The notes beneath the pieces are model-generated. The model was not told the origin of the DNA, ran no database searches, and was given only the letters and a program-made list of their open reading frames with translations. DNA of 45,647 bases from Macrostomum lignano (lineage: Eukaryota): positions 1-45,647 of the forward strand of contig NIVC01000129.1 in assembly GCA_002269645.1 (NCBI GenBank), in the 5' to 3' direction. This document shows positions 3,143-45,647 of the stretch, one piece after another. Every line of letters begins with the position of its first letter. Within the stretch, counting starts at the first letter, position 1. A program made the translations under genes and the position numbers.

Positions 3143-3528
<386 letters not shown>

Positions 3529-10670: not shown

Positions 10671-10899
10671 AGGAGTTTTTTGTTAGAAGCAGGGGCTGCT
10701 TGTACCCTTGTGCACTTTAAGCGACATTGCCACACAACCGGCGAGAGCCATTCCGCCGGCTGCCCTAAACAGGCACACAAGCGCGCGGATGCGTACGCAG
10801 GCCACCCTCTCACACAGGGATGTACAGCGGCCCAGACTTTCTCATTGTCAGACATCTAAGGCAAGCGTAGAATCGAACTCCGGGCACTTCAGCGCTCAC

Positions 10900-15075: not shown

Positions 15076-16145
15076 CAGGCGTGTCGCCACCGGGGGGGAA
15101 CAGGGTGGACATGTCCCCCCCCCAGTAAAAAGCTATGGGGGGACATGCCAATTCTTTGTCCCCCTCACCCCACCTTGTGACTCGTTGTGGTAATCAATAA
15201 TTTTTCTTTCAGGGCGTCAAAATGGAGCGCCTTCGGCGCCAAAATGAGTGCCTGCAGCGCTAAATGAGTGCCTGTGGCGCCAAAATGAGTGCCTGCAGCG
15301 CTAAATGAGTGCCTGCGGCGCTAAAATGAGTGCCTGCAGCGCTAAATGAGTGCCTATGGCGCCAAAATGAGTGCCTGCGGCGCTAAAATGAGTGCCTGCA
15401 GCGCTAAAATGAGTGCCTGCGGCGCTAAAATGAGTGCCTGCAGCGCTAAATGAGTGCCTATGGCGCCAAAATGAGTGCCTGCGGCGCTAAAATGAGTGCC
15501 TGCGGCGCTAAAATGAGTGCCTGCAGCGCTAAAATGAGTGCCTGCGGCGCTAAAATGAGTGCCTGCAGCGCTAAATGAGTGCCTGCAGCGCTAAATGAGT
15601 GCCTGCGGCGCTAAAATGAGTGCCTGCAGCGCTAAATGAGTGCCTATGGCGCCAAAATGAGTGCCTGCGGCGCTAAAATGAGTGCCTGCGGCGCTAAAAT
15701 GAGTGCCTGCAGCGCTAAAATGAGTGCCTGCGGCGCTAAAATGAGTGCCTGCAGCGCTAAATGAGTGCCTATGGCGCCAAAATGAGTGCCTGCGGCGCTA
15801 AAATGAGTGCCTGCGGCGCTAAAATGAGTGCCTGCAGCGCTAAAATGAGTGCCTGCGGCGCTAAAATGAGTGCCTGCAGCGCTAAATGAGTGCCTGCAGC
15901 GCTAAATGAGTGCCTGCAACGCTAAATGAGTGCCTGCGGCGCTAAAATGAGTGCCTGCAGCGCTAAATGAGTGCCTGCAGCGCTAAATGAGTGCCTGCGG
16001 CGCCAAAATGAGTGCCTGAGGCACCAAAATGAGCGCTGACAACACCGATTCTCAAAATAATGGAAATGTAGGAATTTAGTCATGTTCATGTTGAATTCTT
16101 GGCTTTGCCCCCCCCCACCATAAAATACGAATGGCGACGCCCCTG
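15076..16145. mobile_element. Non-autonomous hAT-type DNA transposon carrying an internal minisatellite
   Basis: Left TIR CAGGCGTGTCGCCA (15076-15089); right TIR TGGCGACGCCCCTG (16132-16145), 12/14 match. 8-bp flanks CATACAAG (15068-15075) and CATACAGG (16146-16153), 7/8. G/C-run subterminal segments. An 8-bp TSD with CAG-start TIRs is typical of hAT. Confidence 0.8.
15227..16035. repeat. 20-21-bp minisatellite (GGCGCTAAAATGAGTGCCTGC)n inside the hAT element
   Basis: About 39 tandem copies. Confidence 0.95.
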
Positions 16146-22214: not shown

Positions 22215-22238
22215 CTGTGGCGTGGTTTGGGATAAGGG

Positions 22239-22890
22239 ATCCGATGTGAGTTTATGCTGTGAGATCCTATCGCAATCTCTTGTGAGCAATGTGAACTTAT
22301 CACACGATCCGATGTGAGTTTATGCTGTGAGATCCTATCGCAATCTCTTGTGAGCAATGTGAACTTATCACACGATCCGATGTGAGTTTATGCTGTGAGA
22401 TCCTATCGCAATCTCTTGTGAGCAATGTGAACTTATCACACGATCCGATGTGAGTTTATGCTGTGAGATCCTATCGCAATCTCTTGTGAGCAATGTGAAC
22501 TTATCACACAATCCGATGTGAGCACTGCGACCAAATCACACAATCTGATGTGAGCACTGTGACCCAATCACACAATCCGATGTGAGCACTGTGACCCAAT
22601 CACACAATCTGATGTGAGCACTGTGACCCAATCACACAATCTGATGTGAGTACCGTGACCCAATCACACAATCTGATGTGATCACTGTGACCCAATCACA
22701 CAATCTGATGTGATCACTGTGACCCAATCACACAATCAGATGTGAGCACTGTGACCCAATCACACAATCCGATGTGAGCACTGTGACCCAATCACACAAT
22801 CTGATGTGGGCACCGTGACCCAATCACACAATCCGATGTGAGCACTGTGACCCAATCACACAATCTGATGTGGGCACCGTGACCCAATCA
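22239..22890. repeat. Intronic minisatellites: 68-bp unit x4 (22239-22510), then a related 32-bp unit (to ~22890)
   Basis: Both units start ATCCGATGTGAG; together they fill nearly the whole 22906-22215 intron. Confidence 0.93.
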
Positions 22891-27074: not shown

Positions 27075-27710
27075 ATACGCCAATATGAAGTGTTGAGGCG
27101 CCAGAACACGCAGGTTTGAGGCGCCAATATGGGAGTGTTGAGGCGTCAGAACACGCAGGTTTGAGGCGCCAATATGGGAGTGTTGAGGCGCCAGGACACA
27201 CTCTTTGAGGCGCCAATATGGGTGAGTGTTGTTGAGGCGCTAGAACACGCAGGTTTGAGGCGCCAATATGGGAGTGTTGAGGCGCCAGGACACACTCTTT
27301 GAGGCGCCAGGACACACTCTTTGAGGCGCCAATATGGGTGAGTGTTGTTGAGGCGCTAGAACACGCAGGTTTGAGGCGCCAATATGGGAGTGTTGAGGCG
27401 CCAGGACACACTCTTTGAGGCGCCAATATGGGAGTGTTGAAACACTTTGAGGCCAATATGGGAGTGTTGAGGCGCCAGGCTCTTTGAGGCGCCGCAGGTT
27501 TGAGGCGCCAATATGGGAGTGTTGAGGCGCTTTTGAGGCGCCAATATGGGAAGGCACACACTCTTTGAGGCGCCAATATGGGAGTTTGAGGCGCTAGAAC
27601 ACAAGGCGCCAATATGGGTGTGTTGAGGCGCTAGAACACGCTGTTTGAGGCACCAATATGGGTGAGTGTTGAGGCGCTAGAATACGCTGGAGGCACCAAT
27701 ATGTGTTGTA
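27075..27710. repeat. Intronic ~22-bp minisatellite (TTGAGGCGCCAATATGGGAGTG alternating with TTGAGGCGCCAGRACAC variants)
   Basis: Tandem copies; explains ORFs 27073-27612. Confidence 0.9.
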
Positions 27711-27858
27711 GAGCAAAGGCTGCACTCAAATATGGCGCGTTTGTATAAACTGTGGAATCAAAGGCCGCCTCCTTAAGCGAAGACGATATTCTAAAACATG
27801 GCGAATTTCCCCAAAAGAAGCCGAAATTACCAGGCACAAACAAGAAATTCTGACGCAC

Positions 27859-28452
27859 CTGATTGCACAGATTGACGTCGGCTTTGTGCTGCAGCAGCAG
27901 GCGCGCCATTTCATCCAGACCGGCGCTAGCCGCCTCAATCAGCGGCGTGCTGTCGCCTTTCAGGCTGCGGCAATTCGCATCGGCGCCGTAGTTGAGCAGC
28001 ACTCTGGCCAGATCGAAGAAATTGGATGTGACGGCGATCAACAGCGGCGGGTCGTTGTCGCCGGCGCTGCCAGGCAGACAGCCGTTGTGCAGGAGCTCCA
28101 CTTTGCCGCTAGCCGCTGCTGCCGCGGCTGCTGCTGCTGCGGCGGCTGCATCAGCGGCTGGCAGGTCGGCTAGCTGCTGCAGAGTGTGCGGACTGCGGGC
28201 GATTGCGACAGCGGCGGCGGCTACTGCCGCTGCGTCTCCGCCGCCGCTGCTGCCACCAGTAACAGCGCCGTCCACGGCAGCTGCGCCGTCGGCAGCTTCG
28301 GGCGGCTGCGCGTTGAGCGAAAGGAGCAACTCGTGCAGCTTCCTGGCTGTCTGGGCGTCGCATTCCAGTAGGCGGCTGCTGTCACCGGAGTCGTCCGTGG
28401 CGGCGGCAGCGATGGCACCCCCGGCGTCAGGGCAGTGGTTTGCAGAATCGAT
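27859..28452 (-). CDS. ANKHD1: Mask/ANKHD1 exon (N-terminal region + first ankyrin repeats)
   Basis: CATCAG|ATC at 28452; ..ECDAQTARKLHELL.. Ala-rich ..DPPLLIAVTSNFFDLARVLLNYGADANCRSLKGDSTPLIEAASAGLDEMARLLLQHKADVNLCNQ; CAG|GTGCGT donor at 27858; 594 nt, phase 0/0. Confidence 0.88.
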
Positions 28453-32863: not shown

Positions 32864-33439
32864 GGCAATTACATGATTTTTATGCGACAATGTCAGGGTC
32901 ACATTATAAGACCGACTTAGAAGATTTTACTTTAAATGTTTGTATGTTATTAAAGTAAAATTTAATTTAATAACAAATAAATAAATGTCTTCTTTTTAAG
33001 TGTATAGTACATTTTTAAGTAGAAGTTCTTAACCAGAATCTGCTTTACATAGATCAAATTTTGTTTCTACCAATCAACGAATAAAAAACACCGTACTTAA
33101 TTTTTACCATTACTTTACAGTATTCTTAACTTTATTTGTATCAGCTCTATCGATTTTTTACTCTGAACGTTTATAACACGTCTTTAAAGCTATTCGACAA
33201 CATTTCATTCCCGTTATAAGATATTCAGATACAAGGTTCTAATATAATGATCTACTGGTGTGGAAAATTAGCTTCGACTGGAAACTGTATGTAGTTTAGG
33301 TAATATATATCGCACCATTCTCCTCAAAAGCTCAAATAAATAGGCCCTGCTGAGGCTTACAAAAGAGGCCACACTGCAATCATTCCTTTAGAATAGATGA
33401 AGGTTGCAGCATTTTACCGACGATCACCAACCATATGCA

Positions 33440-33605
33440 GGCTTTGGTGGGTTTTGGTGGGGTGCTGGTGCTCTGTGTGCGTGCAGGGCTTAGGGCAGCC
33501 TCCCCCTCCGCTCTACGCTATTTAGTCACGCGTCGCGGCCACTGAGTCGGCGTAATTTTGGCAAAATATTTATGCAGTACATGTAATTTTACCGAGTCGC
33601 GTATG
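33440..33605. promoter_or_regulatory. Local GC/CpG cluster upstream of Mask, candidate promoter
   Basis: CpG-rich patch (GTCACGCGTCGCGGCC, GAGTCGGCG, GAGTCGCG) in otherwise very AT-rich DNA, ~600 bp upstream of the putative ATG; positional inference only. Confidence 0.3.
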
Positions 33606-34769
33606 TATTTTTTTCTAACAACTGAAGACAACTGAAGTGCATTGTAGGACGGTTCCCAAGGTTTTCTTTGAATTTAGCTGTAAGCCGGTAAGGAGTGTTT
33701 ATTTGTCGTATTGCTTTGCATCTTCAGTAGTGTATGCTCTCAAGAAATCGGATTTATATGCGACCGAATTATGTATGGCGAACTGGAACTGCATCTCTAA
33801 AGATGCTAGCGATACAACAAATAGATGTGGCATAAAAATTGACTAGATGTCAACACAGACGGCAAATTTTCAAGCAAGAACTACATAAGTCTGTGGTATA
33901 TCGTGCTTGCGAAATATGTAGTGGCTCTTCTTTCTGATTTATTCTTAATGATTCATACATAAAATGAGTAGAAATATATTTATTGTCACTTGTATATCGC
34001 AATAAAAGTTGTGCAGCTTCCTCTCTACACGAGAGAGACTCAAAGCGAATGAGTACTTGAATTTTCAGAAGCTCCTGCTAGACGAGTACAAGCTCGATCA
34101 GAGCTTGCATCGCGCATGATTAAAGCCGCATCCGCTGCTTAAGACCACAAAAGTGTGGTCAACATGCCAGGAGAAGCCAGCCAGCAAAGACTAATTTGAT
34201 AAAGCTGCCTTGTGCAGCTTTGAGTCAGGCTTTTAGACAGTGCTAATAGGTATATGGAGATCTGAGGGAGTTGAGTGACAGAGGAGGACCTTAATGCACT
34301 GCACCCCACAGCGAGGCCCTCGCAGACAGCAAAGCGGAAAGGCATTCTTTATAAGCTAAAATTGTCACGTTTCGAGTTTGCCGAACGGATGGAATGTCGG
34401 AAACTTTTTCGTTGTTCTCACCGCGACCGAGACGCACCCCGCGAGTAATATGAGGTCCTGACGACTACATGATTCCGGCTTCCACGCTTCATCCAAGTCA
34501 CGACTTTCAGCAAAGGGAGGCAGGGGAGTGGCTATAGGTTGGGTGGACCAGCTTCCTGCAGTTGTCATGCGACTGCGAGCGAATTGCCACTGTTGAATAG
34601 CGGCGGCTCCTTGTGGATTTTTTTCAAGCTTGAAGTTTCAATTTGTAACTTTTGAGACGTTTTTTTTCTAAACCGGATGGGGTTTTTGCCATCTCACTAT
34701 ATAGAAAAAGTTCGAGATCCTCAATTTACATGTATTGTCAAAGTCCTTAATCTATTTTTAAGATCCGAT

Positions 34770-35387
34770 CCTCAGTATATTCGCATGATCCTCAGTGCAT
34801 TCACAAGATCCTCAGTGCATTCACAAGATCTTCAATCAATTCACAAGATCCTCATTCAGTTCCCAAGATCCTTAATTAGTTTACAAGATCCTCAATAATT
34901 TCACAAGATCATCAATTAATTCACAATATCTTCAATCAATTCACAAGATCCCCAATCAATTCACAAGATCGTCAATCAGTTCCTAAGATCCTTGCACAAT
35001 AGATCCTTCTCAATCAATTCACAAGATCTTCAATCAATTCACAAGATCCTCAATCATTTCACAAGATCATCAATTAATTCACAATATCTTCAATCAATTC
35101 ACAAGATCCCCAATCAATTCACAAGATCGTCAATCAGTTCCTAAGATCCTTGCACAATAGATCCTTCTCAATCAATTCACAAGATCTTCAATCAATTCAC
35201 AGGATCCTCAATCATTTCACAAGATCATCAATTAATTCACAATATCTTCAATCAATTCACAAGATCTTCAATCAATTCACAATATCCTTAATCAATTCAC
35301 AAGATCCTCAATCAATTTACATCTTCAATCAATTCACAAGGTCCACCATCAATTTACAGAATCCTCAATCAATTCACGAGATCCTCA
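34770..35387. repeat. Degenerate 20-bp minisatellite (AATCAATTCACAAGATCCTC)
   Basis: Tandem copies, with an internal ~120-bp block duplication. Confidence 0.9.
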
Positions 35388-35673
35388 ATCAGCTGTGCGG
35401 CCTGTGCTATAAAACTGGAAAAGGCAGTCGTGCAGGAGAGGAGCATCGAAGTCCTTGCGCACAATAGAGATAGAGCTGCCGCCGTGAGGGGAATAAGGCT
35501 CCCATTTCCTCCCTCTCCCTCTTTCCGTTTCTCCCCTTTCGCTTCCACAAATGCCGACCGAAGCGGGCCCTTGGTGCGCCGGAAATTAAATTCTGCAACC
35601 CCCACCCCCCTCCTCCCCAAGATGGGCAATTTACCACCGAAGAACCGCCAACTGAATCTCCTACTTTCCTCTG

Positions 35674-35676
<3 letters not shown>

Positions 35677-35759
<83 letters not shown>
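35677..35759. repeat. (CT)n microsatellite at the left junction of the Penelope-like array
   Basis: Direct reading. Confidence 0.97.
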
Positions 35760-36553
35760 GCTATCGAACATGTTCTTAATAACAACAAAATCGAACTAAG
35801 GGAAGAAATCTGGATTAAAAAACTAGGGACTTACAAACCGCCAGGCACGAACATCAGGGTCGACAATCATCTTCTCCGACCCATCCCAATGGTCCTTCCT
35901 TTTCACCCATCTACGGTCTGGCTTGCCAACGAGATTGCTAAAAACTTTGATAAGCTACAAAATAAACCAGGCTCCCGCATACTGCCCGCTTTTACACGGC
36001 AACGTAACTTACAGAGCCTCCTGGCTCCCAATAAGTTCAAGTCTCAGCCAGGAAACATTTAATCATTTTAACCAATGCGCTATTTTTACCCTATTAAAGT
36101 ACTCGTACAATATTTATTCACGTGTCATTTATTTTATTTTATTCAAACTGCTTAATTGTACGCTCAGTATTGATTTTTATGCTCCTACCCCCAATACCGG
36201 CATTTCATCTAATCGTATAGTATCGCATATCGCATAGTACTTCGAAATAACAATTTTTTTATTACAAATATACTGTCGTTTAAAATGAATGGTGGAAAGC
36301 CTCTGGGACAAGTTAGAGCTAGGCAAAACAGGGTTTTAAATGTACATCCCTCATATGTACAACTACTCATCAATTCTATCAGACTAAGAAAAATAATACT
36401 TAAAAGACCAACTTGCATTGCATGACACACAGATTTTTTGGCCTGACGAAGAGCCCAGAGGCTCGAAACCGGTAGCCCATATTAAATTAATTAAGTCTTT
36501 TGATTTTTTTAAACACGCCGTGACCTCTCTTCTCTCTCTCTCTACCTCTCTCC
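35760..36553 (+). repeat. PLE pseudo-LTR 1 (3' end of ORF2 + 3' UTR)
   Basis: Matches 40704-41496 and 44707-45495; begins GCTATCGAACA, contains ..KFKSQPGNI stop at 36062. Confidence 0.93.
36440..36477 (+). ncRNA. Minimal type I hammerhead ribozyme, copy 1
   Basis: GGC-CTGACGA-A-GAGCC(CAGA)GGCTC-GAAA-CCGG-TA-GCC: stem I GGC/GCC, core CUGANGA, 5-bp stem II, GAAA, palindromic ACCGGT stem III, GUA cleavage triplet (cut after 36474). Confidence 0.88.
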
Positions 36554-36593
36554 TGCCTATGCCTAGCTTGCTCTAGTGCCCGTGCATCATACT

Positions 36594-38780
36594 ATGGAGA
36601 ATCCCTCCAGGAGATGGAGAGGTCGCACGTTCTACAACAGTAACTACCAAAAACAGAACAGGAGACAACCTAGAAAGAACGAACACCTGGATGACGCCTC
36701 CAAACAAGCCAGACTGCTTTTGGACAAACTCCTGAGATGCTACCACCATCGGGCAGTCATCGAATCTATTATTGTCGAGCCACAACGGGCCTATGGCTCT
36801 CTTCAACAAGCCGCACGATCACTGGACCAGGCCTTTCGCCCTGCATTCGCGTCCGACAAACTCCTACAAGACCTACAGGCAGCGAATGTTGCCCACATCG
36901 AGAGCTCACTACTGAAGATCCTGACACACTACGATGCGGCAACCGAAGAGTCTGAAAATCTACTGCGACAACTCTGTAACGACAAAGGACCACCAGATCT
37001 AGCCTCAGTGGCGCGACAAGTCATCCACCATGTGGGCCTCCGCTGCAAACTTGATGCCTCGACCGTCTCAAAATTTCTGGATCGGTTGAATTCTCTGTCT
37101 AATGACCCCTCTGTTATTGACTTACTCGCTACGCCTGCCGCTGCTGCACCGACCATGACCTCGGTGGAGGAATCTCAACCACGCCAGGAGGGCACGGACT
37201 TCTGGAACCTAGATGACGAGTCAACTGTCAGCCTGAACAATTTCTTTCTGCAAAAGAACCAAGCGGATCGACTGGAGTCATTCCTGGCCAAGGAAGTCGC
37301 TCCCCTAGCCTGTCGGCATTCTTCAGCGTCAGAACGACCGGAACCACGACTGATTGCTTGGTTCGGCCCTGACTACAGCTACTCGGGTCGACAACTACGA
37401 TCAAACGGGCCGATCCCCTCAGGGCTCCAACCTCTACTCGAGTCCGTTGAAACTGCGACAGGAAAGCGCTTCAACTCGGTCCTCGTCAACGTGTACCAGA
37501 ACGGCTCCCAATTCGTCGGCTGGCATGCCGATGACGAAGCCGTGCTTGGCGAACGACCCTTCATCGCTTCAGTGTCAATCGGGTGCACCAGAACCTTCGA
37601 GCTAAAAGCTAAGTCAGCGACTTCGCCTTGTCTATCTCTCGATCTATTTCATGGCAGTCTTCTGACCATGTCAGGCGACTGTCAGGCCAACTTTTTTCAT
37701 CGAATTCCCCCGCAACACCACAAACGTGGCCGCCGATTCAACTTGACCTTCCGCTGGACTCACGAAGATCCCAACACCGGTGCCACCGGGGCTTCCCTGG
37801 CCCCATCTGCACCCAGTGCCACCAAGACAGCCACTCCCAACACCGCAGTCCCTCTGACTGCAAGCATGGCACCAGTCGATCTCGACGAGAGCGCCCAATC
37901 TGCCGAACATCGTAGGATCCCAGAGGTCGTCTGCTCCAACAACGACACCACGACAGCCAGCACGATCGCAGCATCTAGCAATGAGCCCACGGCAAGCACG
38001 AACACGGAGACCAACGCCGACTCGGTAGTGGACGGCGGCGCGACGACCATCGGGGACGTGGCAGCGAGCGCCGATGCGACGATCAGCAACGACCCCTCAG
38101 CGGCTGCGGTTGCAGCTTCGGACGGCAGTCCGGCGGCAGGCGGGACCACCGAAGTCGCCTCACCTGAGAACGGCTGTACGTCGGCAGCTGACGACCTCTT
38201 TGTGACCCCGCCTCTTCCACGGGTGGGACTGCCTGCTTCACCTGCCAAACGCCGCTTACCATCGCCGGACTCTGAAGACTCCCCTGGTGGTCCGGAACGC
38301 CACAGGCCGCATCTGAATGACTCACCCAGCACCTTTGAGCAACCTGTTTCGCTCATCATCAGCAGGGACTGCCGGAACCTGGTACTCTGCCCAAAGCCTT
38401 TCGAGGGCCTCAAACTGCCGGCAATCACAGAGGTACATGAGTACTCACTGTCAGCCTTACCATCCCTACTGAGGTCGGCTGCCCTGCGGAACCGGCAATG
38501 CGCTCAGTCAACGGTGCTGGTCCTGCCGGACGAGCTGCTCAGCACAGACCACTGGCGAGAGTTGCTCTCTGAGGCTATCGATCTACTCAGAGCGGACAGT
38601 CTGACACGTAAGATCCTTCTGGTTCCGTCCTTTGCCAGCGGTGAAGAATTGACTCAATATCTGAGTAAGAAACTCTCACCTGTTACTCTTATTGCCTCTC
38701 CTCCTCTTAAACCAATTGTATCCTTCTCAGCGCCGGACTTTATACTGGCGCTGGCTTCCTGGCTGAGAACTTTAAACTAG
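36594..38780 (+). CDS. PLE ORF1: basic N-terminus, helical domain, AlkB-family 2OG-Fe(II) dioxygenase (ALKBH2/3-like), T/A/S/D-rich linker, C-terminal alpha/beta domain
   Basis: First ATG at 36594 (ORF track starts at GTG 36576). EPRLIAWFG..YSYSG, FNSVLVNVYQNG..VGWHADDE (His 37524, Asp 37530), IASVSIG..RTF, L.HGSLLTM.G..Q..FFH (His 37698), RFNLTFR (37734-37754). No frameshift. Confidence 0.92.
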   Translation: MENPSRRWRGRTFYNSNYQKQNRRQPRKNEHLDDASKQARLLLDKLLRCYHHRAVIESIIVEPQRAYGSLQQAARSLDQAFRPAFASDKLLQDLQAANVAHIESSLLKILTHYDAATEESENLLRQLCNDKGPPDLASVARQVIHHVGLRCKLDASTVSKFLDRLNSLSNDPSVIDLLATPAAAAPTMTSVEESQPRQEGTDFWNLDDESTVSLNNFFLQKNQADRLESFLAKEVAPLACRHSSASERPEPRLIAWFGPDYSYSGRQLRSNGPIPSGLQPLLESVETATGKRFNSVLVNVYQNGSQFVGWHADDEAVLGERPFIASVSIGCTRTFELKAKSATSPCLSLDLFHGSLLTMSGDCQANFFHRIPPQHHKRGRRFNLTFRWTHEDPNTGATGASLAPSAPSATKTATPNTAVPLTASMAPVDLDESAQSAEHRRIPEVVCSNNDTTTASTIAASSNEPTASTNTETNADSVVDGGATTIGDVAASADATISNDPSAAAVAASDGSPAAGGTTEVASPENGCTSAADDLFVTPPLPRVGLPASPAKRRLPSPDSEDSPGGPERHRPHLNDSPSTFEQPVSLIISRDCRNLVLCPKPFEGLKLPAITEVHEYSLSALPSLLRSAALRNRQCAQSTVLVLPDELLSTDHWRELLSEAIDLLRADSLTRKILLVPSFASGEELTQYLSKKLSPVTLIASPPLKPIVSFSAPDFILALASWLRTLN
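38771..38780 (+). promoter_or_regulatory. Candidate -1 programmed ribosomal frameshift site U-UUA-AAC followed by the ORF1 stop UAG (copy 1)
   Basis: ORF1 codons ACT-TTA-AAC-TAG; XXXYYYZ heptamer TTTAAAC at 38771-38777 in the correct phase; the -1 frame is ORF2. Confidence 0.75.
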
Positions 38781-41006
38781 CTGACTACTGTAGGCCTCCC
38801 AAACTGGAAGGCAACATTTTGAATCTACACCCTACCTTCAAACTCTCCGAGTCTGAGACGAGGCTGCTAGATAGGGACTCAATTTTATCCCAACCCAAGC
38901 CCTTGATTTCGATGAGTTGAGGAACTGCATGACGGAATTTCATCGTAAACTTTTCTGGAAAGACTTTTTCAAAAAGAGGGGTCTCGCCAATACCAGCCCG
39001 CCCCCCTTCACCGGGAAATCAGGGAAGGAGGTTCCCCTCAGACTTAGAAGGGATGAGTGCAACTTGTTGGTACTTGAGAACCAAAATCTGGTAGAGAATT
39101 TGACAACGGTACAGATCAAAGGCAACCTAGAGGCACCAGAGACCAGGGCCATTCAGAGGCTCAAGCGAAACAGCTCCGTCCTTATAAAAAAGGCGGACAA
39201 AGGCAACGCAGTGGTCATCATGCACCCTAAGGACTACGAATTTGCAGCCTACAACCAACTGTTTGACACTGATGCCTATCAACAGCTGGACCAGCCATTG
39301 CAACCCGGACTGCGGAGCTTATTAGGGGGATCTTCCTCAATTTATGTAACAGAAAGTTCATATCTAAGAAACAGTGTGCATTTCTTTGTCCCGGAGAGAA
39401 CTTCCGTCCCCGGCATTTCTACCTACTCCCAAAAATTCACAAGGACCCGGCCACCTGGCTGATCCCCTTTCGGGTCCCAGCAGGCAGACCTATCGTTAGC
39501 GGATGCAGTTCTGAAGCAATTGGGGCAGAAAAGTACATAGACTTCTTTCTAAAACCGATTGCCCAAGCGCAACCCACTTTCATTAAGGACTCCTATGACT
39601 TCAAGGCACACCTTATGGATAAAAGCTGCACGGAAGGTTCGACTCTGGCAACCTGTGATGTCCAGAGTCTGTACTCCATGATCCCAATAGATCAGGGCAT
39701 TGCAGCGATCCAGGAATTCTTTAACCGATACCCGGATCCCATTAGACCGGATGCTGAAATAATAAAGCAGCTGGAATTGTGTTTGTACAGGAATGACTTT
39801 GAATTTGACAAAATGATTTTCCTACAACTTAGAGGCACAGCCATGGGGCGCATATTTGCGCCCAGCTATGCCTGTCTCTTCATGAGCCTCTGGGAGGAAA
39901 CTGCCCTGAGAACTGCTCTTTATAAGCCGAACATCTATTTTAGGTACATAGATGATATCTTCATTCACTGGGACCACCCGGCTGAAACTCTGACAGAATT
40001 TGTTGTACACCTAAATTCAATCAACCCCAACATCAAACTCACCGTCAGCTCCTCATCAACTGAGGTCAGTTTCCTTGACATGACCATCAGGAAAGCTGAA
40101 AACCGCTTCACAACACAACTGTTTTCAAAAGAAACAGACACTCATAGATTGTTGCACCGACAGTCCTTCCATCCGTCACACACCTTCAAGGGGGTAGTAA
40201 AATCCCAAATCCTTCGGTACGCTCGTATATGTGATGACTACAAGTCTTTCAACCGTGCTTTCAATTCTTTAAAATCGGAACTCAAGCAATTAGGCTACTC
40301 GAAGATTTTTCTTAGAAACTGCAAAAAGGAGGTCCTCATACTTATGAACTGGACTGCAGGACCAACGACCAATCTGGGTCTGCTTCCCAAAGGGTTCCAT
40401 CCCTGTGGGTCATCCCGCTGCAAATGCTGCACCCACTCACCGCCTGCTCTCTCCGCCCAGGGACTGAAACCGGCTTCTGGTTTTTTAATCTCTCAGAGCC
40501 TGTCCTGTGGCTCCAAGAGCATCATCTATGGCATCTCCTGCAACCAGTGCCACCCTGGGAAAATCTTCTATGTAGGGATGACTAGAAGAACAATGAGAGA
40601 TAGAATGAACCAGCACAGGTCAAATATTAACAGGAGAGTCGTAACTTCGGGGTCAGAGCACTTTCTCACCCCCAATCACTCAATTGCAAACTTTGTCTCC
40701 ATTGCTATCGAACAAGTTCTTAATAACAACAAAATCGAACTAAGGGAAGAAATCTGGATTAAAAAACTAGGGACTGACAAACCGCCAGGTACGAACATCA
40801 GGGTCGACAATCATCTTCTCCGACCCATCCCAATGGTCCTTCCTTTTCACCCATCTACGGTCTGGCTTGCCAACGAGATTGCTAAAAACTTTGATAAGCT
40901 ACAAAATAAACCAGGCTCCCGCATACTGCCCGCTTTTACACGGCAACGTAACTTACAGAGCCTCCTGGCTCCCAATAAGTTCAAGTCTCAGCCAGGAAAC
41001 ATTTAA
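38771..41006 (+). CDS. PLE ORF2, copy 1: reverse transcriptase + Cys-rich linker + GIY-YIG endonuclease; two 1-nt deletions (~38875, ~39307) relative to copy 2
   Basis: NILNL..LSESETRLLDRGLNF.PT, KKADKGNAVV, LPKIHK, GRPIVS, DVQSLYSMIP, GTAMG..FAPSYACLFM, YFRYIDDIF (39945-39956), FLDM, HPSHTFKGVVKSQILRY..C, CGSSRCKCC (40404-40430), IIYG (40521) ..FYVG (40569), HxxxxH/E motifs; TAA 41004-41006. Confidence 0.93.
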
Positions 41007-41496
41007 TCATTTTAACCAATGCGCTATTTTTACCCTATTAAAGTACTCGTACAATATTTATTCACGTGTCATTTATTTTATTTTATTCAAACTGCTTAAT
41101 TGTACGCTCAGTATTGATTTTTATGCTCCTACCCCAATACCGGCATTTCATCTAATCGTATAGTATCGCATATCGCATAGTACTTCGAAATAACAATTTT
41201 TTTATTACAAATATACTGTCGTTTAAAATGAATGGTGGAAAGCCTCTGGGACAAGTTAGAGCTAGGCAAAACAGGGTTTTAAATGTACATCCCTCATATG
41301 TACAACTACTCATCAATTCTATCAGACTAAGAAAAATAATACTTAAAAGACCAACTTGCATTGCATGACACACAGATTTTTTGGCCTGACGAAGAGCCCA
41401 GAGGCTCGAAACCGGTAGCCCATATTAAATTAATTAAGTCTTTTGATTTTTTTAAACACGCCGTGACCTCTCTTCTCTCTCTCTCTACCTCTCTCC
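40704..41496 (+). repeat. PLE pseudo-LTR 2
   Basis: Direct repeat of 35760-36553 (offset 4944). Confidence 0.93.
41383..41420 (+). ncRNA. Minimal type I hammerhead ribozyme, copy 2
   Basis: Identical to 36440-36477. Confidence 0.88.
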
Positions 41497-41568
41497 AACT
41501 CTGCTTTGCTCAAAGCCGCCGCAGTTGCTACTGCAACCAGGGGAGAGAAACAGAATAAAATCACTATA

Positions 41569-42781
41569 TTCAGTGTCAATCGGGTGCACCAGAACCTTCG
41601 AGCTAAAAGCTAAGTCAGCGACCTCCCCTTGTCTATCTCTCGATCTATTTCATGGCAGTCTTCTGACCATGTCAGGCGACTGTCAGGCCAACTTTTTTCA
41701 TCGAATTCCCCCGCAACACCACAAACGTGGCCGCCGATTCAACTTGACCTTCCGCTGGACTCACGAAGATCCCAACACCGGTGCCACCGGGGCTTCCCTG
41801 GCCCCATCTGCACCCAGTGCCACCAAGACAGCCACTCCCAACACCGCAGTCCCTCTGACTGCAAGCATGGCACCAGTCGATCTCGACGAGAGCGCCCAAT
41901 CTGCCGAACATCGTAGGATCCCAGAGGTCGTCTGCTCCAACAACGACACCACGACAGCCAGCACGATCGCAGCATCTAGCAATGAGCCCACGGCAAGCAC
42001 GAACACGGAGACCAACGCCGACTCGGTAGTGGACGGCGGCGCGACGACCATCGGGGACGTGGCAGCGAGCGCCGATGCGACGATCAGCAACGACCCCTCA
42101 GCGGCTGCGGTTGCGGCTTCGGACGGCAGTCCGGCGGCAGGCGGGACCACCGAAGTCGCCTCACCTGAGAACGGCTGTACGTCGGCAGCTGACGACCTCT
42201 TTGTGACCCCGCCTCTTCCACGGGTGGGACTGCCTGCTTCACCTGCCAAACGCCGCTTACCATCGCCGGACTCTGAAGACTCCCCTGGTGGTCCGGAACG
42301 CCACAGGCCGCATCTGAATGACTCACCCAGCACCTTTGAGCAACCTGTTTCGCTCATCATCAGCAGGGACTGCCGGAACCTGGTACTCTGCCCAAAGCCT
42401 TTCGAGGGCCTCAAACTGCCGGCAATCACAGAGGTACATGAGTACTCACTGTCAGCCTTACCATCCCTACTGAGGTCGGCTGCCCTGCGGAACCGGCAAT
42501 GCGCTCAGTCAACGGTGCTGGTCCTGCCGGACGAGCTGCTCAGCACAGACCACTGGCGAGAGTTGCTCTCTGAGGCTATCGATCTACTCAGAGCGGACAG
42601 TCTGACACGTAAGATCCTTCTGGTTCCGTCCTTTGCCAGCGGTGAAGAATTGACTCAATATCTGAGTAAGAAACTCTCACCTGTTACTCTTATTGCCTCT
42701 CCTCCTCTTAAACCAATTGTATCCTTCTCAGCGCCGGACTTTATACTGGCGCTGGCTTCCTGGCTGAGAACTTTAAACTAG
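41569..42781 (+). pseudogene. 5'-truncated PLE ORF1, copy 2 (starts inside the AlkB domain, after the HxD motif)
   Basis: Matches 37568-38780 at offset 4001; the first residues of the tracked ORF 41525 come from junction sequence. Confidence 0.9.
42772..42781 (+). promoter_or_regulatory. Candidate -1 frameshift site U-UUA-AAC-UAG (copy 2)
   Basis: TTTAAAC at 42772-42778; the ORF2 frame is open from 42712 and has no ATG until ~42931. Confidence 0.75.
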
Positions 42782-45008
42782 CTGACTACTGTAGGCCTCC
42801 CAAACTGGAAGGCAACATTTTGAATCTACACCCTACCTTCAAACTCTCCGAGTCTGAGACGAGGCTGCTAGATAGGGGACTCAATTTTATCCCAACCCAA
42901 GCCCTTGATTTCGATGAGTTGAGGAACTGCATGACGGAATTTCATCGTAAACTTTTCTGGAAAGACTTTTTCAAAAAGAGGGGTCTCGCCAATACCAGCC
43001 CGCCCCCCTTCACCGGGAAATCAGGGAAGGAGGTTCCCCTCAGACTTAGAAGGGATGAGTGCAACTTGTTGGTACTTGAGAACCAAAATCTGGTAGAGAA
43101 TTTGACAACGGTACAGATCAAAGGCAACCTAGAGGCACCAGAGACCAGGGCCATTCAGAGGCTCAAGCGAAACAGCTCCGTCCTTATAAAAAAGGCGGAC
43201 AAAGGCAACGCAGTGGTCATCATGCACCCTAAGGACTACGAATTTGCAGCCTACAACCAACTGTTTGACACTGATGCCTATCAACAGCTGGACCAGCCAT
43301 TGCAACCCGGGACTGCGGAGCTTATTAGGGGGATCTTCCTCAATTTATGTAACAGAAAGTTCATATCTAAGAAACAGTGTGCATTTCTTTGTCCCGGAGA
43401 GAACTTCCGTCCCCGGCATTTCTACCTACTCCCAAAAATTCACAAGGACCCGGCCACCTGGCTGATCCCCTTTCGGGTCCCAGCAGGCAGACCTATCGTT
43501 AGCGGATGCAGTTCTGAAGCAATTGGGGCAGAAAAGTACATAGACTTCTTTCTAAAACCGATTGCCCAAGCGCAACCCACTTTCATTAAGGACTCCTATG
43601 ACTTCAAGGCACACCTTATGGATAAAAGCTGCACGGAAGGTTCGACTCTGGCAACCTGTGATGTCCAGAGTCTGTACTCCATGATCCCAATAGATCAGGG
43701 CATTGCAGCGATCCAGGAATTCTTTAACCGATACCCGGATCCCATTAGACCGGATGCTGAAATAATAAAGCAGCTGGAATTGTGTTTGTACAGGAATGAC
43801 TTTGAATTTGACAAAATGATTTTCCTACAACTTAGAGGCACAGCCATGGGGCGCATATTTGCGCCCAGCTATGCCTGTCTCTTCATGAGCCTCTGGGAGG
43901 AAACTGCCCTGAGAACTGCTCTTTATAAGCCGAACATCTATTTTAGGTACATAGATGATATCTTCATTCACTGGGACCACCCGGCTGAAACTCTGACAGA
44001 ATTTGTTGTACACCTAAATTCAATCAACCCCAACATCAAACTCACCGTCAGCTCCTCATCAACTGAGGTCAGTTTCCTTGACATGACCATCAGGAAAGCT
44101 GAAAACCGCTTCACAACACAACTGTTTTCAAAAGAAACAGACACTCATAGATTGTTGCACCGACAGTCCTTCCATCCGTCACACACCTTCAAGGGGGTAG
44201 TAAAATCCCAAATCCTTCGGTACGCTCGTATATGTGATGACTACAAGTCTTTCAACGATGCTTTCAATTCTTTAAAATCGGAACTCAAGCAATTAGGCTA
44301 CTCGAAGATTTTTCTTAGAAACTGCAAAAAGGATGTCCTCATACTTATGAACTGGACTGCAGGACCAACGACCAATCTGGGTCTGCTTCCCAAAGGGTTC
44401 CATCCCTGTGGGTCATCCCGCTGCAAATGCTGCACCCACTCACCGCCTGCTCTCTCCGCCCAGGGACTGAAACCGGCTTCTGGTTTTTTAATCTCTCAGA
44501 GCCTGTCCTGTGGCTCCAAGAGCATCATCTATGGCATCTCCTGCAACCAGTGCCACCCTGGGAAAATCTTCTATGTAGGGATGACTAGAAGAACAATGAG
44601 AGATAGAATGAACCAGCACAGGTCAAATATTAACAGGAGAGTCGTAACTTCGGGGTCTGAGCACTTTCTCACCCCCAATCACTCGATTGCAAACTTTGTC
44701 TCCATTGCTATCGAACAGTTCTTAATAACAACAAAATCGAACTAAGGGAAGAAATCTGGATTAAAAAACTAGGGACTTACAAACCGCCAGGCACGAACAT
44801 CAGGGTCGACAATCATCTTCTCCGACCCATCCCAATGGTCCTTCCTTTTCACCCATCTACGGTCTGGCTTGCCAACGAGATTGCTAAAAACTTTGATAAG
44901 CTACAAAATAAACCAGGCTCCCGCATACTGCCCGCTTTTACACGGCAACGTAACTTACAGAGCCTCCTGGCTCCCAATAAGTTCAAGTCTCAGCCAGGAA
45001 ACATTTAA
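42772..45008 (+). CDS. PLE ORF2, copy 2: RT + GIY-YIG; one 1-nt deletion (~44717) relative to copy 1
   Basis: Uninterrupted 42772-44716; GAACAGTT here vs GAACAAGTT in copy 1; true stop TAA 45006-45008. Confidence 0.93.
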
Positions 45009-45495
45009 TCATTTTAACCAATGCGCTATTTTACCCTATTAAAGTACTCGTACAATATTTATTCACGTGTCATTTATTTTATTTTATTCAAACTGCTTAA
45101 TTGTACGCTCATATTGATTTTTATGCTCCTACCCCCAATACCGGCATTTCATCTAATCGTATAGTATCGCATATCGCATAGTACTTCGAAATAACAATTT
45201 TTTTATTACAAATATACTGTCGTTTAAAATGAATGGTGGAAAGCCTCTGGGACAAGTTAGAGCTAGGCAAAACAGGGTTTTAAATGTACATCCCTCATAT
45301 GTACAACTACTCATCAATTCTATCAGACTAAGAAAAATAATACTTAAAAGACCAACTTGCATTGCATGACACACAGATTTTTTGGCCTGACGAAGAGCCC
45401 AGAGGCTCGAAACGGTAGCCCATATTAAATTAATTAAGTCTTTTGATTTTTTTAAACACGCCGTGACCTCTCTTCTCTCTCTCTCTACCTCTCTC
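44707..45495 (+). repeat. PLE pseudo-LTR 3
   Basis: Third copy of the direct repeat. Confidence 0.92.
45384..45420 (+). ncRNA. Hammerhead ribozyme, copy 3 (stem III reads ACGGT, one C short)
   Basis: Same motif with GAAACGGTA instead of GAAACCGGTA. Confidence 0.8.

Positions 45496-45647
<152 letters not shown>

What the first reader, a model, noticed from the sequence alone, without database searches (positions are those of the whole stretch)
36594..38780. Penelope-like retroelement carrying its own intact AlkB nucleic-acid demethylase
Seen: ORF1 sits between the pLTR and the RT ORF and is duplicated with the element (copy 2), so it is part of the mobile unit and not a neighbouring host gene. 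The Fe ligands H-x-D (37524/37530) and distal H (37698) and the 2OG-binding RxNxTxR (37734-37754) are all present, with the ALKBH2/3-type EPRL.AW / YSYSG lid. Established: canonical endonuclease-positive PLEs have a single RT+GIY-YIG ORF; ALKBH2/3 enzymes reverse m1A/m3C, which block reverse transcription; AlkB domains occur in some plant RNA virus replicases. Inference: the element may repair or de-mark its own RNA or cDNA to protect target-primed reverse transcription or evade modification-based host control. I am not aware of a described AlkB-bearing PLE but cannot verify novelty.
Basis: partly seen in the sequence, partly recalled or inferred. Interest (0 to 1): 0.92.

Follow-up and report, generated by a model that had tools for sequence, protein, structure and literature searches.

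The report
Flatworm retrotransposon encoding an AlkB demethylase
A young, multi-copy Penelope-like retrotransposon of the flatworm Macrostomum lignano carries, inside its own first gene, an intact ALKBH3-like nucleic-acid demethylase, and five other distantly related elements share this layout, so the enzyme is a long-kept part of the element and not a stray host gene.

Summary
ORF1 (36594-38780, 728 aa) has a 2OG-FeII_Oxy_2/AlkB domain (Pfam E 1.4e-28). The HxD, distal His and RxNxTxR motifs sit at the stated coordinates. The closest solved structure is human ALKBH3.

ORF1 lies inside a 4943-bp Penelope-like unit (36553-41495). The unit has a hammerhead motif in its pseudo-LTR, an RT, a CX4CxxC linker and a GIY-YIG endonuclease. 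It is inserted in (CT)n.

Three independent M. lignano insertions have the same unit ends. Copy 2 in the window is 5'-truncated and lacks HxD.

New here:
- The RT frame is -1 to ORF1 and overlaps it at an in-phase U_UUA_AAC.
- Five further families (RT 42-50% identical) have the same helical-AlkB-C-terminal ORF1, with catalytic residues invariant.
- More distant relatives have a helical+GDSL ORF1 without AlkB.
- Two LINE-like ORF1 proteins also carry AlkB; one is confirmed by a downstream endonuclease ORF.

Substitutions among copies show purifying selection on ORF1 (ratio 0.26).

The function is inferred, not shown: removal of RT-blocking m1A/m3C from the element's own RNA or cDNA. I found no paper describing this. 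Verdict: a new variant of a known kind.

The parts
35623..35759 (+). (CT)n microsatellite, upstream part of the target site
   Evidence: The same (CT)n follows the array at 45496-45647.
35760..36552 (+). 5'-truncated upstream copy (unit positions 4152-4943), acting as the pseudo-LTR
   Evidence: blastn of the unit against the window, 99.5% identity.
36440..36477 (+). Minimal hammerhead-ribozyme motif in the upstream pseudo-LTR: GGC-CUGACGA-A-helix II-GAA-ACCGGU-A-GCC. Predicted cleavage is after 36474.
   Evidence: The same motif, with covarying helices, occurs upstream of ORF1 in L004, L005 and L008. It matches the PLE min-HHR description in PMC4209133. Rfam models do not detect it.
36553..41495 (+). 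Full-length 4943-bp element unit (copy 1)
   Evidence: The same ends are found at L001, L006 and L007.
36594..38780 (+). ORF1, 728 aa, intact
   Evidence: It is 99% identical to M. lignano BOX15_Mlig007645g3.
36714..37118 (+). Conserved N-terminal domain of ORF1 (LDxxLRxxHH...FxPAF...CKL), predicted all-helical, fold unknown
   Evidence: tblastn and alignment across families. The single-sequence AF2 model has pLDDT 47.5.
37233..37754 (+). AlkB (2OG-FeII_Oxy_2) domain. HxD is at 37524-37532, the distal His at 37698-37700, and RxNxTxR at 37734-37754.
38259..38777 (+). C-terminal domain of ORF1. It occupies the position of the GDSL esterase domain seen in relatives but is not recognisable as one here.
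   Evidence: The AF2 model has pLDDT 51.
38771..38777 (+). U_UUA_AAC slippery heptamer in ORF1 phase, two nucleotides before the UAG stop. The RT frame (-1) is open across it.
38771..41006 (+). RT-endonuclease reading frame of copy 1. It is interrupted by single-base deletions near 38873 and 39306. YIDD is at 39945.
40404..40430 (+). CX4CxxC zinc-finger-like linker (CGSSRCKCC) of Neptune/Nematis-type PLEs
   Evidence: The motif definition is from PMC8557442.
40521..40772 (+). GIY-YIG endonuclease domain
   Evidence: Pfam PF01541, E 1.4e-4, 22.5 bits against a cutoff of 22.6. Many RT homologues also carry PF01541. The motif was read.
41383..41420 (+). Minimal hammerhead motif in the tail of copy 1. 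Predicted cleavage is after 41417.
41496..41568 (+). 73-nt filler of unknown origin between copy 1 and the truncated copy 2
   Evidence: The same filler recurs in L006.
41569..45495 (+). Copy 2, 5'-truncated at unit position 1016. It holds an ORF1 remnant without HxD (to 42781), a slippery site at 42772-42778, and an RT-EN frame open for 657 codons, with a single-base deletion near 44716.
45496..45647 (+). (CT)n microsatellite, downstream part of the target site

Best explanation
This is an endonuclease-positive Penelope-like retrotransposon of Macrostomum lignano with a Neptune/Nematis-type linker. Its first gene is a three-part protein: a helical N-terminal domain, an ALKBH3-like Fe(II)/2-oxoglutarate dioxygenase, and a diverged C-terminal domain that sits where relatives have a GDSL esterase.

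Shown:
- The element is transcribed as a unit bounded by minimal hammerhead motifs in the pseudo-LTRs.
- ORF1 ends on an in-phase U_UUA_AAC.
- The RT-endonuclease frame is -1 and open across that site.

Inferred from these: most ribosomes make ORF1 protein alone, and a minority slip to make an ORF1-RT-EN fusion, as in Gag/Gag-Pol. This would place the demethylase in the same particle as the RT.

Also inferred: the AlkB domain oxidatively removes Watson-Crick-face methyl lesions or marks (m1A, m3C; the ALKBH3 substrate class) from the element's own single-stranded RNA template, and possibly from nascent cDNA. These lesions stall reverse transcriptases, so removing them would raise the yield of full-length copies during target-primed reverse transcription into (CT)n sites.

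Evolution: the domain was inserted into a pre-existing helical+esterase ORF1 and has been kept under selection through deep divergence of the lineage.
For: Identity of the domain:
- Pfam E 1.4e-28.
- Human ALKBH3 scores 110 bits, ALKBH2 63 bits and E. coli AlkB 24 bits.
- Fe and 2OG ligands, and the lid residues equivalent to ALKBH3 R131 and Y143, are present.

Part of the element:
- Identical unit ends at three independent insertions. Each is a 5'-truncated copy followed by a full copy, inserted in CT-rich microsatellites, mostly (CT)n.
- At least five paralogous gene models on five contigs.

PLE hallmarks: RT, CX4CxxC linker, GIY-YIG and min-HHR.

Conservation:
- L002, L004, L005, L008 and L012 carry AlkB and the helical domain upstream of a PLE RT. 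L002, L004, L005 and L008 have long intact ORF1s (883-1067 aa). L012's ORF1 intactness was not established.
- RT is 42-50% identical and AlkB 36-52% identical.
- H311, D313, H369, R381, T385, F386, R387, N294 and Y301 are invariant in the five aligned ORF1s (window, L002, L004, L005, L008).
- RT clade A, in which every examined member has AlkB, has 200/200 bootstrap support.

Selection: among M. lignano copies ORF1 has 8 synonymous and 6 nonsynonymous variants (ratio 0.26, p 0.011). RT-EN gives 0.22.

Frameshift: RT is in the -1 frame and in-phase UUUAAAC sits in the overlap in all five families checked (L012 was not checked), plus the AlkB-less relative L014 (phase checked) and L013 (heptamer found just upstream of the RT gene); L015 has GUUAAAC. 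The background rate of the heptamer is 2.3e-4 per nt.

Precedents:
- Plant-virus AlkB domains repair m1A/m3C in RNA (PMC2553587).
- An orchid Ty3/Gypsy element encodes an active AlkB (PMC9289625).
Against: - No biochemical or expression data were available, so the substrate (m1A/m3C, m6A or other; RNA or DNA) is inferred only from similarity to ALKBH3.
- No significantly stable structure lies downstream of the slippery site (z -0.9 to +0.3). Frameshift efficiency and its stimulator are therefore unknown.
- Every RT copy examined in the assemblies carries single-base deletions. No fully intact copy was seen. The deletions are private to one or two copies and mostly lie in short homopolymer runs, which suggests long-read assembly error.
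- Three of the four full-length copies were found through their intact ORF1, so ORF1 intactness in those is ascertainment.
- The hammerhead motif is not detected by Rfam models.
- The origin of the AlkB domain is unresolved (bootstrap about 10%).
Confidence: 0.6

Rival explanations
1. Epitranscriptomic evasion. The AlkB domain erases a host-installed regulatory mark (m6A, or m1A used as a mark) on the element's RNA, or on host RNAs or tRNAs, to escape modification-based silencing or decay. On this reading it does not repair damage that blocks RT.
For: The orchid Ty3/Gypsy AlkB is an m6A demethylase in vitro, and its authors propose this role (PMC9289625). m6A affects L1 activity (PMC7873242, listed). 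AlkB also occurs in LINE-like ORF1 proteins, which suggests a general benefit for retroelement RNA.
Against: The domain resembles ALKBH3 (110 bits) far more than ALKBH5 (26 bits). The ALKBH3 class mainly acts on m1A/m3C. No information on RNA modification in M. lignano was examined.
Confidence: 0.2
2. DNA-side role. The enzyme acts on single-stranded DNA during target-primed reverse transcription, on nascent cDNA or the displaced target strand, and not on RNA.
For: By established knowledge, ALKBH3-type enzymes accept ssDNA as well as RNA. Viral AlkBs also repair ssDNA (PMC2553587 abstract). Fusion to RT-EN by frameshifting would bring the enzyme to the integration site.
Against: Nothing in the sequence distinguishes DNA from RNA preference. 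Most ORF1 protein would be made without RT-EN, like RNA-coating ORF1/Gag proteins.
Confidence: 0.12
3. Non-catalytic module. The AlkB fold serves only as a single-strand nucleic-acid binding or chaperone domain within ORF1.
For: ORF1 proteins of retroelements are generally RNA binders or chaperones. The neighbouring C-terminal domain has lost its esterase motifs in clade A.
Against: All Fe(II) and 2OG ligands are invariant across five families, despite 36-52% overall identity in the domain. A purely binding role would not require this.
Confidence: 0.05
4. Passenger or host gene. ORF1 is a host ALKBH3-like gene that was transduced once, or merely lies next to PLE copies, and has no role for the element.
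For: PLEs can transduce host DNA (PMC6431247). The M. lignano copies are annotated as ordinary hypothetical genes.
Against: - ORF1 lies inside identical unit boundaries at independent insertions.
- The same architecture occurs in six families, five of them forming an RT clade with 200/200 support.
- An in-phase frameshift site couples ORF1 to RT.
- Purifying selection on ORF1 equals that on RT.
Confidence: 0.03

Closest known systems
Canonical EN+ Penelope-like elements of the Neptune/Nematis type (Arkhipova 2006; Craig et al. 2021, PMC8557442)
   Same: [quoted passage not shown] Partial-tandem pseudo-LTR structure with 5'-truncated copies. Minimal hammerhead motif in the pseudo-LTR. Insertion into microsatellites.
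   Different: These are described as single-ORF elements. Here a 728-aa ORF1 with an AlkB domain precedes RT and is coupled to it by a -1 frameshift site. The target is (CT)n, not (TA)n. Assignment to Neptune versus Nematis was not tested.
Athena/Terminon EN-minus PLEs of bdelloid rotifers (PMC5408684, PMC6431247)
   Same: PLEs with accessory ORFs, including GDSL esterase and coiled-coil ORFs, some with lost catalytic residues. An ORF1 separated from RT by a frameshift is noted for PLEs in the Fig. 1 legend of PMC8557442.
   Different: Those elements lack the endonuclease, are telomeric, and can reach 40 kb. No AlkB is listed among their accessory functions.
Orchid Ty3/Gypsy elements with an ALKBH5-like ORF (PMC9289625)
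   Same: A retrotransposon lineage that fixed an AlkB-family dioxygenase with all cofactor ligands. It is proposed to act on the element's own RNA.
   Different: A plant LTR element of 25 kb. The AlkB is a separate ORF of the ALKBH5 (m6A eraser) clade and a recent acquisition in one genus. Here it is an animal PLE, the enzyme is ALKBH3-like and is a domain inside ORF1, and it has been conserved through deep divergence.
AlkB domains in plant RNA virus replicases, Flexiviridae (PMC544882, PMC2553587)
   Same: A replicating RNA genome carries its own AlkB domain within a polyprotein. Those domains were shown to remove m1A/m3C from RNA. This is the best functional analogue.
   Different: Those are RNA viruses of plants with an RNA-dependent RNA polymerase, not reverse-transcribing elements of animals.
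Esterase-containing ORF1 proteins of CR1/L2-type LINEs (PMC3905857)
   Same: An ORF1 made of a helical or other N-terminal module plus an SGNH/GDSL esterase. The AlkB-less relatives L013, L014 and L015 have this layout, and L008 has it with AlkB inserted.
   Different: A different retroelement class. In the M. lignano element itself the esterase motifs are not recognisable.

Membership tests
Penelope-like elements (EN+) | PLE-type reverse transcriptase | tested here: met
   RVT_1 match at E 6e-6, below the gathering score. 791 homologues, the best carrying the PLE-associated PF28514/PF26215 plus GIY-YIG. YIDD at 39945 and 43948.
Penelope-like elements (EN+) | C-terminal GIY-YIG endonuclease | tested here: met
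   PF01541, E 1.4e-4, 22.5 bits against a cutoff of 22.6, so marginal. The motif IIYGISC...IFYVGMT...R...H...E is read at 40521-40772. Homologues carry PF01541.
Penelope-like elements (EN+) | Pseudo-LTR: partial tandem with a 5'-truncated upstream copy | tested here: met
   Seen at the window, L001, L006 and L007, with truncation points 4152, 3445, 4152 and 3892.
Penelope-like elements (EN+) | Hammerhead ribozyme motif in the pseudo-LTR | tested here: met
   Motif with a CUGANGA core, an unpaired A 5' of stem II, a 4-6 bp helix II, a palindromic helix III and a 3-5 bp helix I. It covaries across four families and fits PMC4209133. Rfam models do not score it. Self-cleavage is untested.
Neptune/Nematis-type PLEs | CX2-5CxxC zinc-finger-like linker before GIY-YIG | tested here: met
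   CGSSRCKCC at 40404-40430. The definition is in PMC8557442.
Neptune/Nematis-type PLEs | Phylogenetic placement with named reference families | not tested
AlkB / ALKBH dioxygenases | 2OG-FeII_Oxy_2 fold above the family threshold | tested here: met
   100.9 bits against a cutoff of 31.2.
AlkB / ALKBH dioxygenases | Fe(II) ligands HxD...H and 2OG ligands (N, Y, RxNxTxR) | tested here: met
   H311, D313, H369, N294, Y301 and R381-R387 are invariant in five families.
ALKBH3 subfamily | Closest to ALKBH3, with lid residues equivalent to R131 and Y143 | tested here: met
   110 bits to ALKBH3 against 63 to ALKBH2. EPRLIAWFG.DYSYSG aligns to QQPRLTAWYGELPYTYS. Numbering is derived from the His of HxD being ALKBH3 H191, which is from my own knowledge.
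ALKBH3 subfamily | Phylogenetic grouping with eukaryotic ALKBH3 | tested here: inconclusive
   The NJ point estimate places all retroelement AlkBs in one clade, next to the clade holding human ALKBH3, with bacteria outside. Bootstrap support is only about 10%.
ALKBH3 subfamily | Demethylation of m1A/m3C in single-stranded nucleic acid | not testable with these tools
   Needs an enzyme assay.
-1 programmed ribosomal frameshift signals | X_XXY_YYZ slippery heptamer in the upstream frame, within an overlap with an open -1 frame | tested here: met
   In-phase U_UUA_AAC in the ORF1/RT overlap in the window, L002, L004, L005, L008 and L014, and UUUAAAC found just upstream of the RT gene in L013; G_UUA_AAC in L015.
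-1 programmed ribosomal frameshift signals | Downstream stimulatory hairpin or pseudoknot | tested here: inconclusive
   Small hairpins lie 5-13 nt downstream in four of five families, but the z-scores are -0.9 to +0.3. Pseudoknots are not predicted by the tool.
SGNH/GDSL esterase domain of retroelement ORF1 | GDS, G, GxN and DxxH blocks, or a Pfam Lipase_GDSL match | tested here: not met
   The window C-terminal domain has no Pfam match, even at E 10, and lacks the blocks. Only its last 11 residues resemble L008. L008, L014 and L015 have the blocks and weak Lipase_GDSL_2 matches (E 1e-4 to 3e-3, below threshold).

The most novel reading that the evidence does not exclude
AlkB demethylases are a recurrent, exchangeable accessory module of animal retroelements: a whole PLE clade, at least one member of a second PLE clade, and LINE-like ORF1 proteins carry one. 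On this reading the module exists because hosts, or the cellular environment, methylate retroelement RNA on the Watson-Crick face, and this acts as a real barrier to reverse transcription. That would be a previously unrecognised layer of conflict between retrotransposons and RNA modification in animals.
Probability: 0.25. Interest if true: 0.85.

Novelty: new variant of a known kind. Interest (0 to 1): 0.72.

Why it matters
Retroelements rarely fix new enzymatic domains, and each such case points to a rate-limiting step in their life cycle.

An ALKBH3-like demethylase has been kept with all catalytic residues through deep divergence of a Penelope-like lineage. It appears to be tethered to the reverse transcriptase by ribosomal frameshifting. 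This suggests that methyl lesions or marks on template RNA (m1A, m3C) limit reverse transcription in vivo.

It gives an animal counterpart to the AlkB domains of plant RNA viruses and of orchid Gypsy elements. It extends the known coding repertoire of endonuclease-positive PLEs, which are usually described as single-ORF elements.

It also offers natural comparison sets for experiments: sister families with and without AlkB. Macrostomum lignano is a transgenic-tractable flatworm model, which makes tests feasible.

Practically, these ORF1 copies are annotated as ordinary host 'Fe2OG dioxygenase' genes and should be flagged as transposon-derived.

Tried and rejected
- A full-length ORF1 word-indexed search returned only the M. 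lignano protein, because low-complexity words swamped the candidates. The domain-only search and the exhaustive search worked.
- Rfam found no hammerhead, either across 33000-45647 or in a 141-nt slice. The motif was found by pattern and checked by hand and by script. MAFFT misaligned the four hammerheads because the loop lengths differ, so pairs were counted per sequence instead.
- Single-sequence AlphaFold2 of the C-terminal and N-terminal ORF1 domains gave pLDDT 51 and 47.5. These are too poor for fold search, so none was run.
- The C-terminal domains of clade A could not be shown to be homologous to GDSL.
- The AlkB tree has about 10% bootstrap support (a first attempt timed out). The origin of the domain, host ALKBH3 or another source, is left open. 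The best database scores go to short bacterial AlkBs (141 bits), but that database is dominated by bacteria.
- No stable structure was found downstream of the slippery site.
- The host taxa of the related contigs could not be identified. The run accessions appear in no paper and the clusters carry no names.
- One literature query was too loose and returned only unrelated oxygenase papers.
- I considered that intact ORF1 with broken RT might mean host domestication of ORF1. I rejected this for two reasons. The loci were ascertained through intact ORF1. The RT breaks are private single-base deletions, mostly in short homopolymer runs, and the majority state keeps the frame open.
Full report
**1. 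The observation**

The region 36594-38780 is a single open frame of 728 codons from its first ATG. Pfam places a 2OG-FeII_Oxy_2 (AlkB) domain at residues 220-393 of the 734-aa GTG-start ORF, with E 1.4e-28 and 100.9 bits against a cutoff of 31.2.

Against solved structures, the domain scores as follows:

| Structure | Bits | E-value |
|---|---|---|
| Human ALKBH3 | 110 | 1e-30 |
| Human ALKBH2 | 63 | about 1e-16 |
| ALKBH5 | 26 | about 7e-5 |
| E. coli AlkB | 24 | about 3e-4 |

The stretch EPRLIAWFGPDYSYSG aligns with the ALKBH3 lid segment that holds R131 and Y143.

**2. The host and the element**

ORF1 is 99% identical to Macrostomum lignano hypothetical protein BOX15_Mlig007645g3. Its 90% cluster holds five sequences on five contigs, four of them 728 aa long. 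One of the five carries no name and looks like the window's own entry.

Downstream of ORF1 lie the other parts of a Penelope-like element (PLE):
- a reverse transcriptase (RVT_1, YIDD);
- a CX4CxxC linker (CGSSRCKCC, 40404-40430);
- a GIY-YIG endonuclease (40521-40772).

The nearest RT relatives carry the PLE-associated Pfam families together with GIY-YIG. The linker is the one that defines the Neptune and Nematis clades (PMC8557442).

The repeat unit is 4943 bp (36553-41495). In the window it is arranged as follows:

| Coordinates | Feature |
|---|---|
| 35623-35759 | (CT)n |
| 35760-36552 | 5'-truncated copy, unit positions 4152-4943 |
| 36553-41495 | full-length unit (copy 1) |
| 41496-41568 | 73-nt filler |
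| 41569-45495 | copy 2, starting at unit position 1016 |
| 45496-45647 | (CT)n |

**3. ORF1 belongs to the mobile unit**

Three more M. lignano loci were fetched.
- L001 and L007 have different flanks and different truncation points in the upstream partial copy (3445 and 3892). Their full copy begins and ends at the same nucleotides as in the window. These are independent insertions. The flanks are CT-rich microsatellites, (CT)n in the window/L006 and at L001 and a CCCTCTCT-like repeat downstream of L007.
- L006 has the same structure as the window and may be the homeologous or allelic locus.

ORF1 (unit positions 42-2228) is inside the unit in all of them. Copies are 98.2-99.8% identical, so the family is young.

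**4. A hammerhead motif upstream of ORF1**

The tail of the unit contains GGC-CUGACGA-A-GAGCC-CAGA-GGCUC-GAA-ACCGGU-A-GCC, at 36440-36477 and 41383-41420.

The same architecture lies upstream of ORF1 in three other families. Helices I and II differ but remain complementary, and the helix III palindromes differ: ACGU, ACGCGU and ACUAGU.

This matches the minimal PLE hammerheads described by Cervera and de la Peña. Those have a short helix I, a longer helix II, an unpaired nucleotide 5' of stem II, and a small palindromic helix III that implies dimeric action (PMC4209133).

Rfam covariance models do not detect the motif. Predicted cleavage after 36474 and 41417 would give a 4943-nt RNA with a 119-nt leader before the ORF1 ATG.

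**5. Coupling of ORF1 to RT**

The RT-EN frame has no conserved ATG. It is in the -1 frame relative to ORF1 and is open across the ORF1 stop.

ORF1 ends ...R-T-L-N-stop on the sequence U_UUA_AAC_UAG. This is a classical X_XXY_YYZ slippery heptamer in the correct phase (38771-38777; 42772-42778 in copy 2).

The same in-phase heptamer sits in the ORF1/RT overlap of all five families checked. In L005 the -1 frame opens exactly at the heptamer.

The heptamer's background frequency is 2.3e-4 per nucleotide. Its recurrence in phase at this point cannot be chance.

No significantly stable downstream structure was found. The stimulator, if any, is unknown.

I infer Gag/Gag-Pol-like expression: abundant ORF1 protein and a minor ORF1-RT-EN fusion.

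**6. Conservation in other elements**

The closest RT relatives (47-54% identity) come from public read-set and genome assemblies of unidentified hosts. Every one with enough upstream sequence has AlkB and the helical domain upstream of RT on the same strand:

| Locus | ORF1 length |
|---|---|
| L002 | 1067 aa |
| L004 | 956 aa |
| L005 | 1012 aa |
| L012 (GCA_029980145.1) | AlkB and N-terminal domain found by tblastn; no single intact ORF1 shown |

L008, from a JGI metagenome, carries two tandem units. Each has an ORF1 (one complete at 883 aa, the other cut by the contig end) that overlaps the RT.

Each of the four intact ORF1s has the conserved helical N-terminal domain, a low-complexity spacer, the AlkB domain, another spacer and a C-terminal domain. 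L012 was shown only to carry the helical and AlkB domains.

AlkB identity between families is only 36-52%. Even so, all Fe and 2OG ligands are invariant in the five aligned ORF1s (window, L002, L004, L005, L008).

In an RT neighbour-joining tree:
- the M. lignano element, L002, L004, L005, L012 and P0126 form clade A with 200/200 bootstrap support;
- L008 falls in sister clade B, also 200/200.

**7. Relatives without AlkB**

Clade B members L013 and L014 have a 477-aa ORF1. It consists of the same helical domain plus a clear GDSL/SGNH esterase with blocks GDSN, FSGAN, GINNR and D-x-I-H. It has no AlkB. UUUAAAC lies at the ORF1/RT junction of both (phase checked for L014).

A more distant and abundant family (L015-L017, RT 37% identical) has an 856-aa helical+GDSL ORF1, a G_UUA_AAC site and RT in the -1 frame.

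L008 has helical + AlkB + GDSL, and its esterase is 46% identical to that of L014.

So the AlkB domain sits between the two domains of a pre-existing ORF1. In clade A the C-terminal domain has diverged beyond recognition.

GDSL ORFs, including catalytically dead ones, are already known from Athena PLEs, rotifer LTR elements and CR1/L2 LINEs (PMC5408684, PMC3905857). An ORF1 in endonuclease-positive PLEs is not what the cited literature describes as canonical (PMC8557442). I could not see that paper's Figure 1, so I do not claim novelty for ORF1 as such.

**8. Selection**

Among nine M. lignano copies and fragments:

| Region | Synonymous | Nonsynonymous | Per-site ratio | Binomial p |
|---|---|---|---|---|
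| ORF1 | 8 | 6 | 0.26 | 0.011 |
| RT-EN | 19 | 15 | 0.22 | 2e-5 |

ORF1 is therefore constrained like the RT on the lineages that gave rise to copies.

All coding indels are single-base deletions private to one or two copies, mostly in short homopolymer runs. At each such column the majority state keeps the frame open. This looks like long-read assembly error or very recent decay.

No copy with a fully intact RT-EN frame was seen. ORF1 intactness in L001, L006 and L007 is partly ascertainment, because those loci were found through their intact ORF1.

**9. Origin of the domain**

The best database scores go to short bacterial AlkBs (up to 141 bits), but that database is mostly bacterial.

An NJ tree of 273 domains puts all seven retroelement AlkBs in one 14-tip clade. 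That clade sits inside a 37-tip clade with human ALKBH3 and other long, presumably eukaryotic, proteins, with bacteria outside. Bootstrap support is only about 10%. The origin is unresolved.

**10. AlkB in another retroelement class**

The exhaustive search also returned P0282 and P0377. These proteins have an N-terminal AlkB domain followed by CCHC zinc knuckles.

In L009 the gene after P0282 encodes an apurinic-type 'endonuclease-reverse transcriptase' domain. This is therefore the ORF1 of a LINE-like element. P0377's genomic context was not examined; I call it LINE-like only from its domain layout.

P0282's AlkB is the nearest neighbour of the L004 PLE AlkB (distance 0.42). This hints at exchange between element classes.

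**11. Mechanism**

Shown: domain identity, intact catalytic residues, placement inside the element, in-phase slippery site, conservation and purifying selection.

Inferred: the enzyme is active and acts on the element's own single-stranded RNA, and perhaps its cDNA. It would remove m1A/m3C-type methyl groups, which stall reverse transcriptases, and so favour full-length target-primed reverse transcription.

The closest functional precedent is the AlkB domain of plant flexivirus replicases, which repairs m1A and m3C in RNA (PMC2553587, PMC544882).

Rivals are listed in the Rival explanations section: erasure of a regulatory mark, as proposed for the orchid Gypsy ALKBH5-like protein (PMC9289625); action on DNA at the integration site; a non-catalytic binding role; and a passenger gene. 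The last is contradicted by sections 3, 5, 6 and 8.

**12. Novelty**

No paper in the searched library mentions AlkB in a PLE or in any animal retrotransposon. Repbase and Dfam could not be searched.

I rate this a new variant of a known kind. It is a canonical-looking EN+ PLE whose frameshift-coupled ORF1 has acquired and kept an ALKBH3-like demethylase.

**13. Context in the window**

The rest of the window holds host sequence:
- exons of an ankyrin-repeat plus KH-domain gene on the minus strand (18780-22289, 27631-28329);
- a receptor ligand-binding (ANF_receptor) exon (10896-11852);
- many minisatellite arrays.

Noticed in passing
L009 837-3834 (also L010, L011); proteins P0282 and P0377: LINE-like retrotransposon ORF1 proteins with an N-terminal AlkB domain followed by CCHC zinc knuckles. 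In L009 the next ORF is an apurinic-type endonuclease (Exo_endo_phos_2, E 5e-11). AlkB has therefore been recruited by a second retroelement class. P0282's AlkB is the nearest neighbour of a PLE AlkB (L004).
   Followed up: partly
L014 738-4459 and 5308-9029; L013; L015 1598-6360 (also L016, L017): Endonuclease-positive PLE relatives with an ORF1 made of the same helical domain plus a clear GDSL/SGNH esterase, but no AlkB. RT is in the -1 frame and overlaps ORF1 at UUUAAAC (GUUAAAC in L015). The L015 family is abundant (85 contigs). ORF1-bearing EN+ PLEs therefore seem common, although canonical EN+ PLEs are described as single-ORF.
   Followed up: partly
window 41496-41568; L006 10185-10257 and again after the (CT)n downstream of 14174: A 73-nt sequence unrelated to the unit precedes the 5'-truncated copy. 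It recurs after the next (CT)n in L006. This suggests that the block '73 nt + truncated copy + (CT)n' has itself been tandemly duplicated. Its origin is unknown.
   Followed up: no
window 38873, 39306, about 44716; equivalent sites in L001, L006, L007: All 18 coding indels among copies are single-base deletions, mostly in short homopolymer runs (GG, CC, GGGG, TTT). Each is private to one or two copies. This is likely long-read assembly error, so gene models in this assembly may be wrongly broken.
   Followed up: partly
protein P0395 (1309 aa, M. lignano): A chimeric gene model fuses about 650 unrelated N-terminal residues to an ORF1 copy with internal deletions. Transposon ORF1 copies are being annotated as, or merged into, host genes ('Fe2OG dioxygenase domain-containing protein').
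   Followed up: no
window 18780-22289 (-) and 27631-28329 (-): Long exons encoding ankyrin repeats and a KH domain (Ank E 3e-26, KH_1 E 2e-18). This is probably one host gene, in a GC-rich (0.58-0.67) block.
   Followed up: no
window 10896-11852 (-): Exon with a receptor-family ligand-binding region (ANF_receptor, E 3e-47).
   Followed up: no
window 1-1382, 3127-3528, 5603-7064, 8634-9524, 12422-13733, 15213-16033, 34767-35391 and others: An unusually dense series of minisatellite arrays with periods of 4-311 nt. One is a 20-nt array directly upstream of the PLE insertion. There is also an AT-rich block (GC 0.26-0.34) at about 29-34 kb.
   Followed up: no
window 37760-38428 (-): A 222-aa antisense ORF lies inside the low-complexity Ala/Ser/Thr-rich spacer of ORF1 and is repeated in copy 2. 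It is probably a by-product of composition and not a gene.
   Followed up: no
window about 45410-45415 (tail of copy 2): The hammerhead palindrome ACCGGT reads A-CGGT here (one base missing), so the exact motif is found only twice in the window. This is either a mutation or an assembly error.
   Followed up: no
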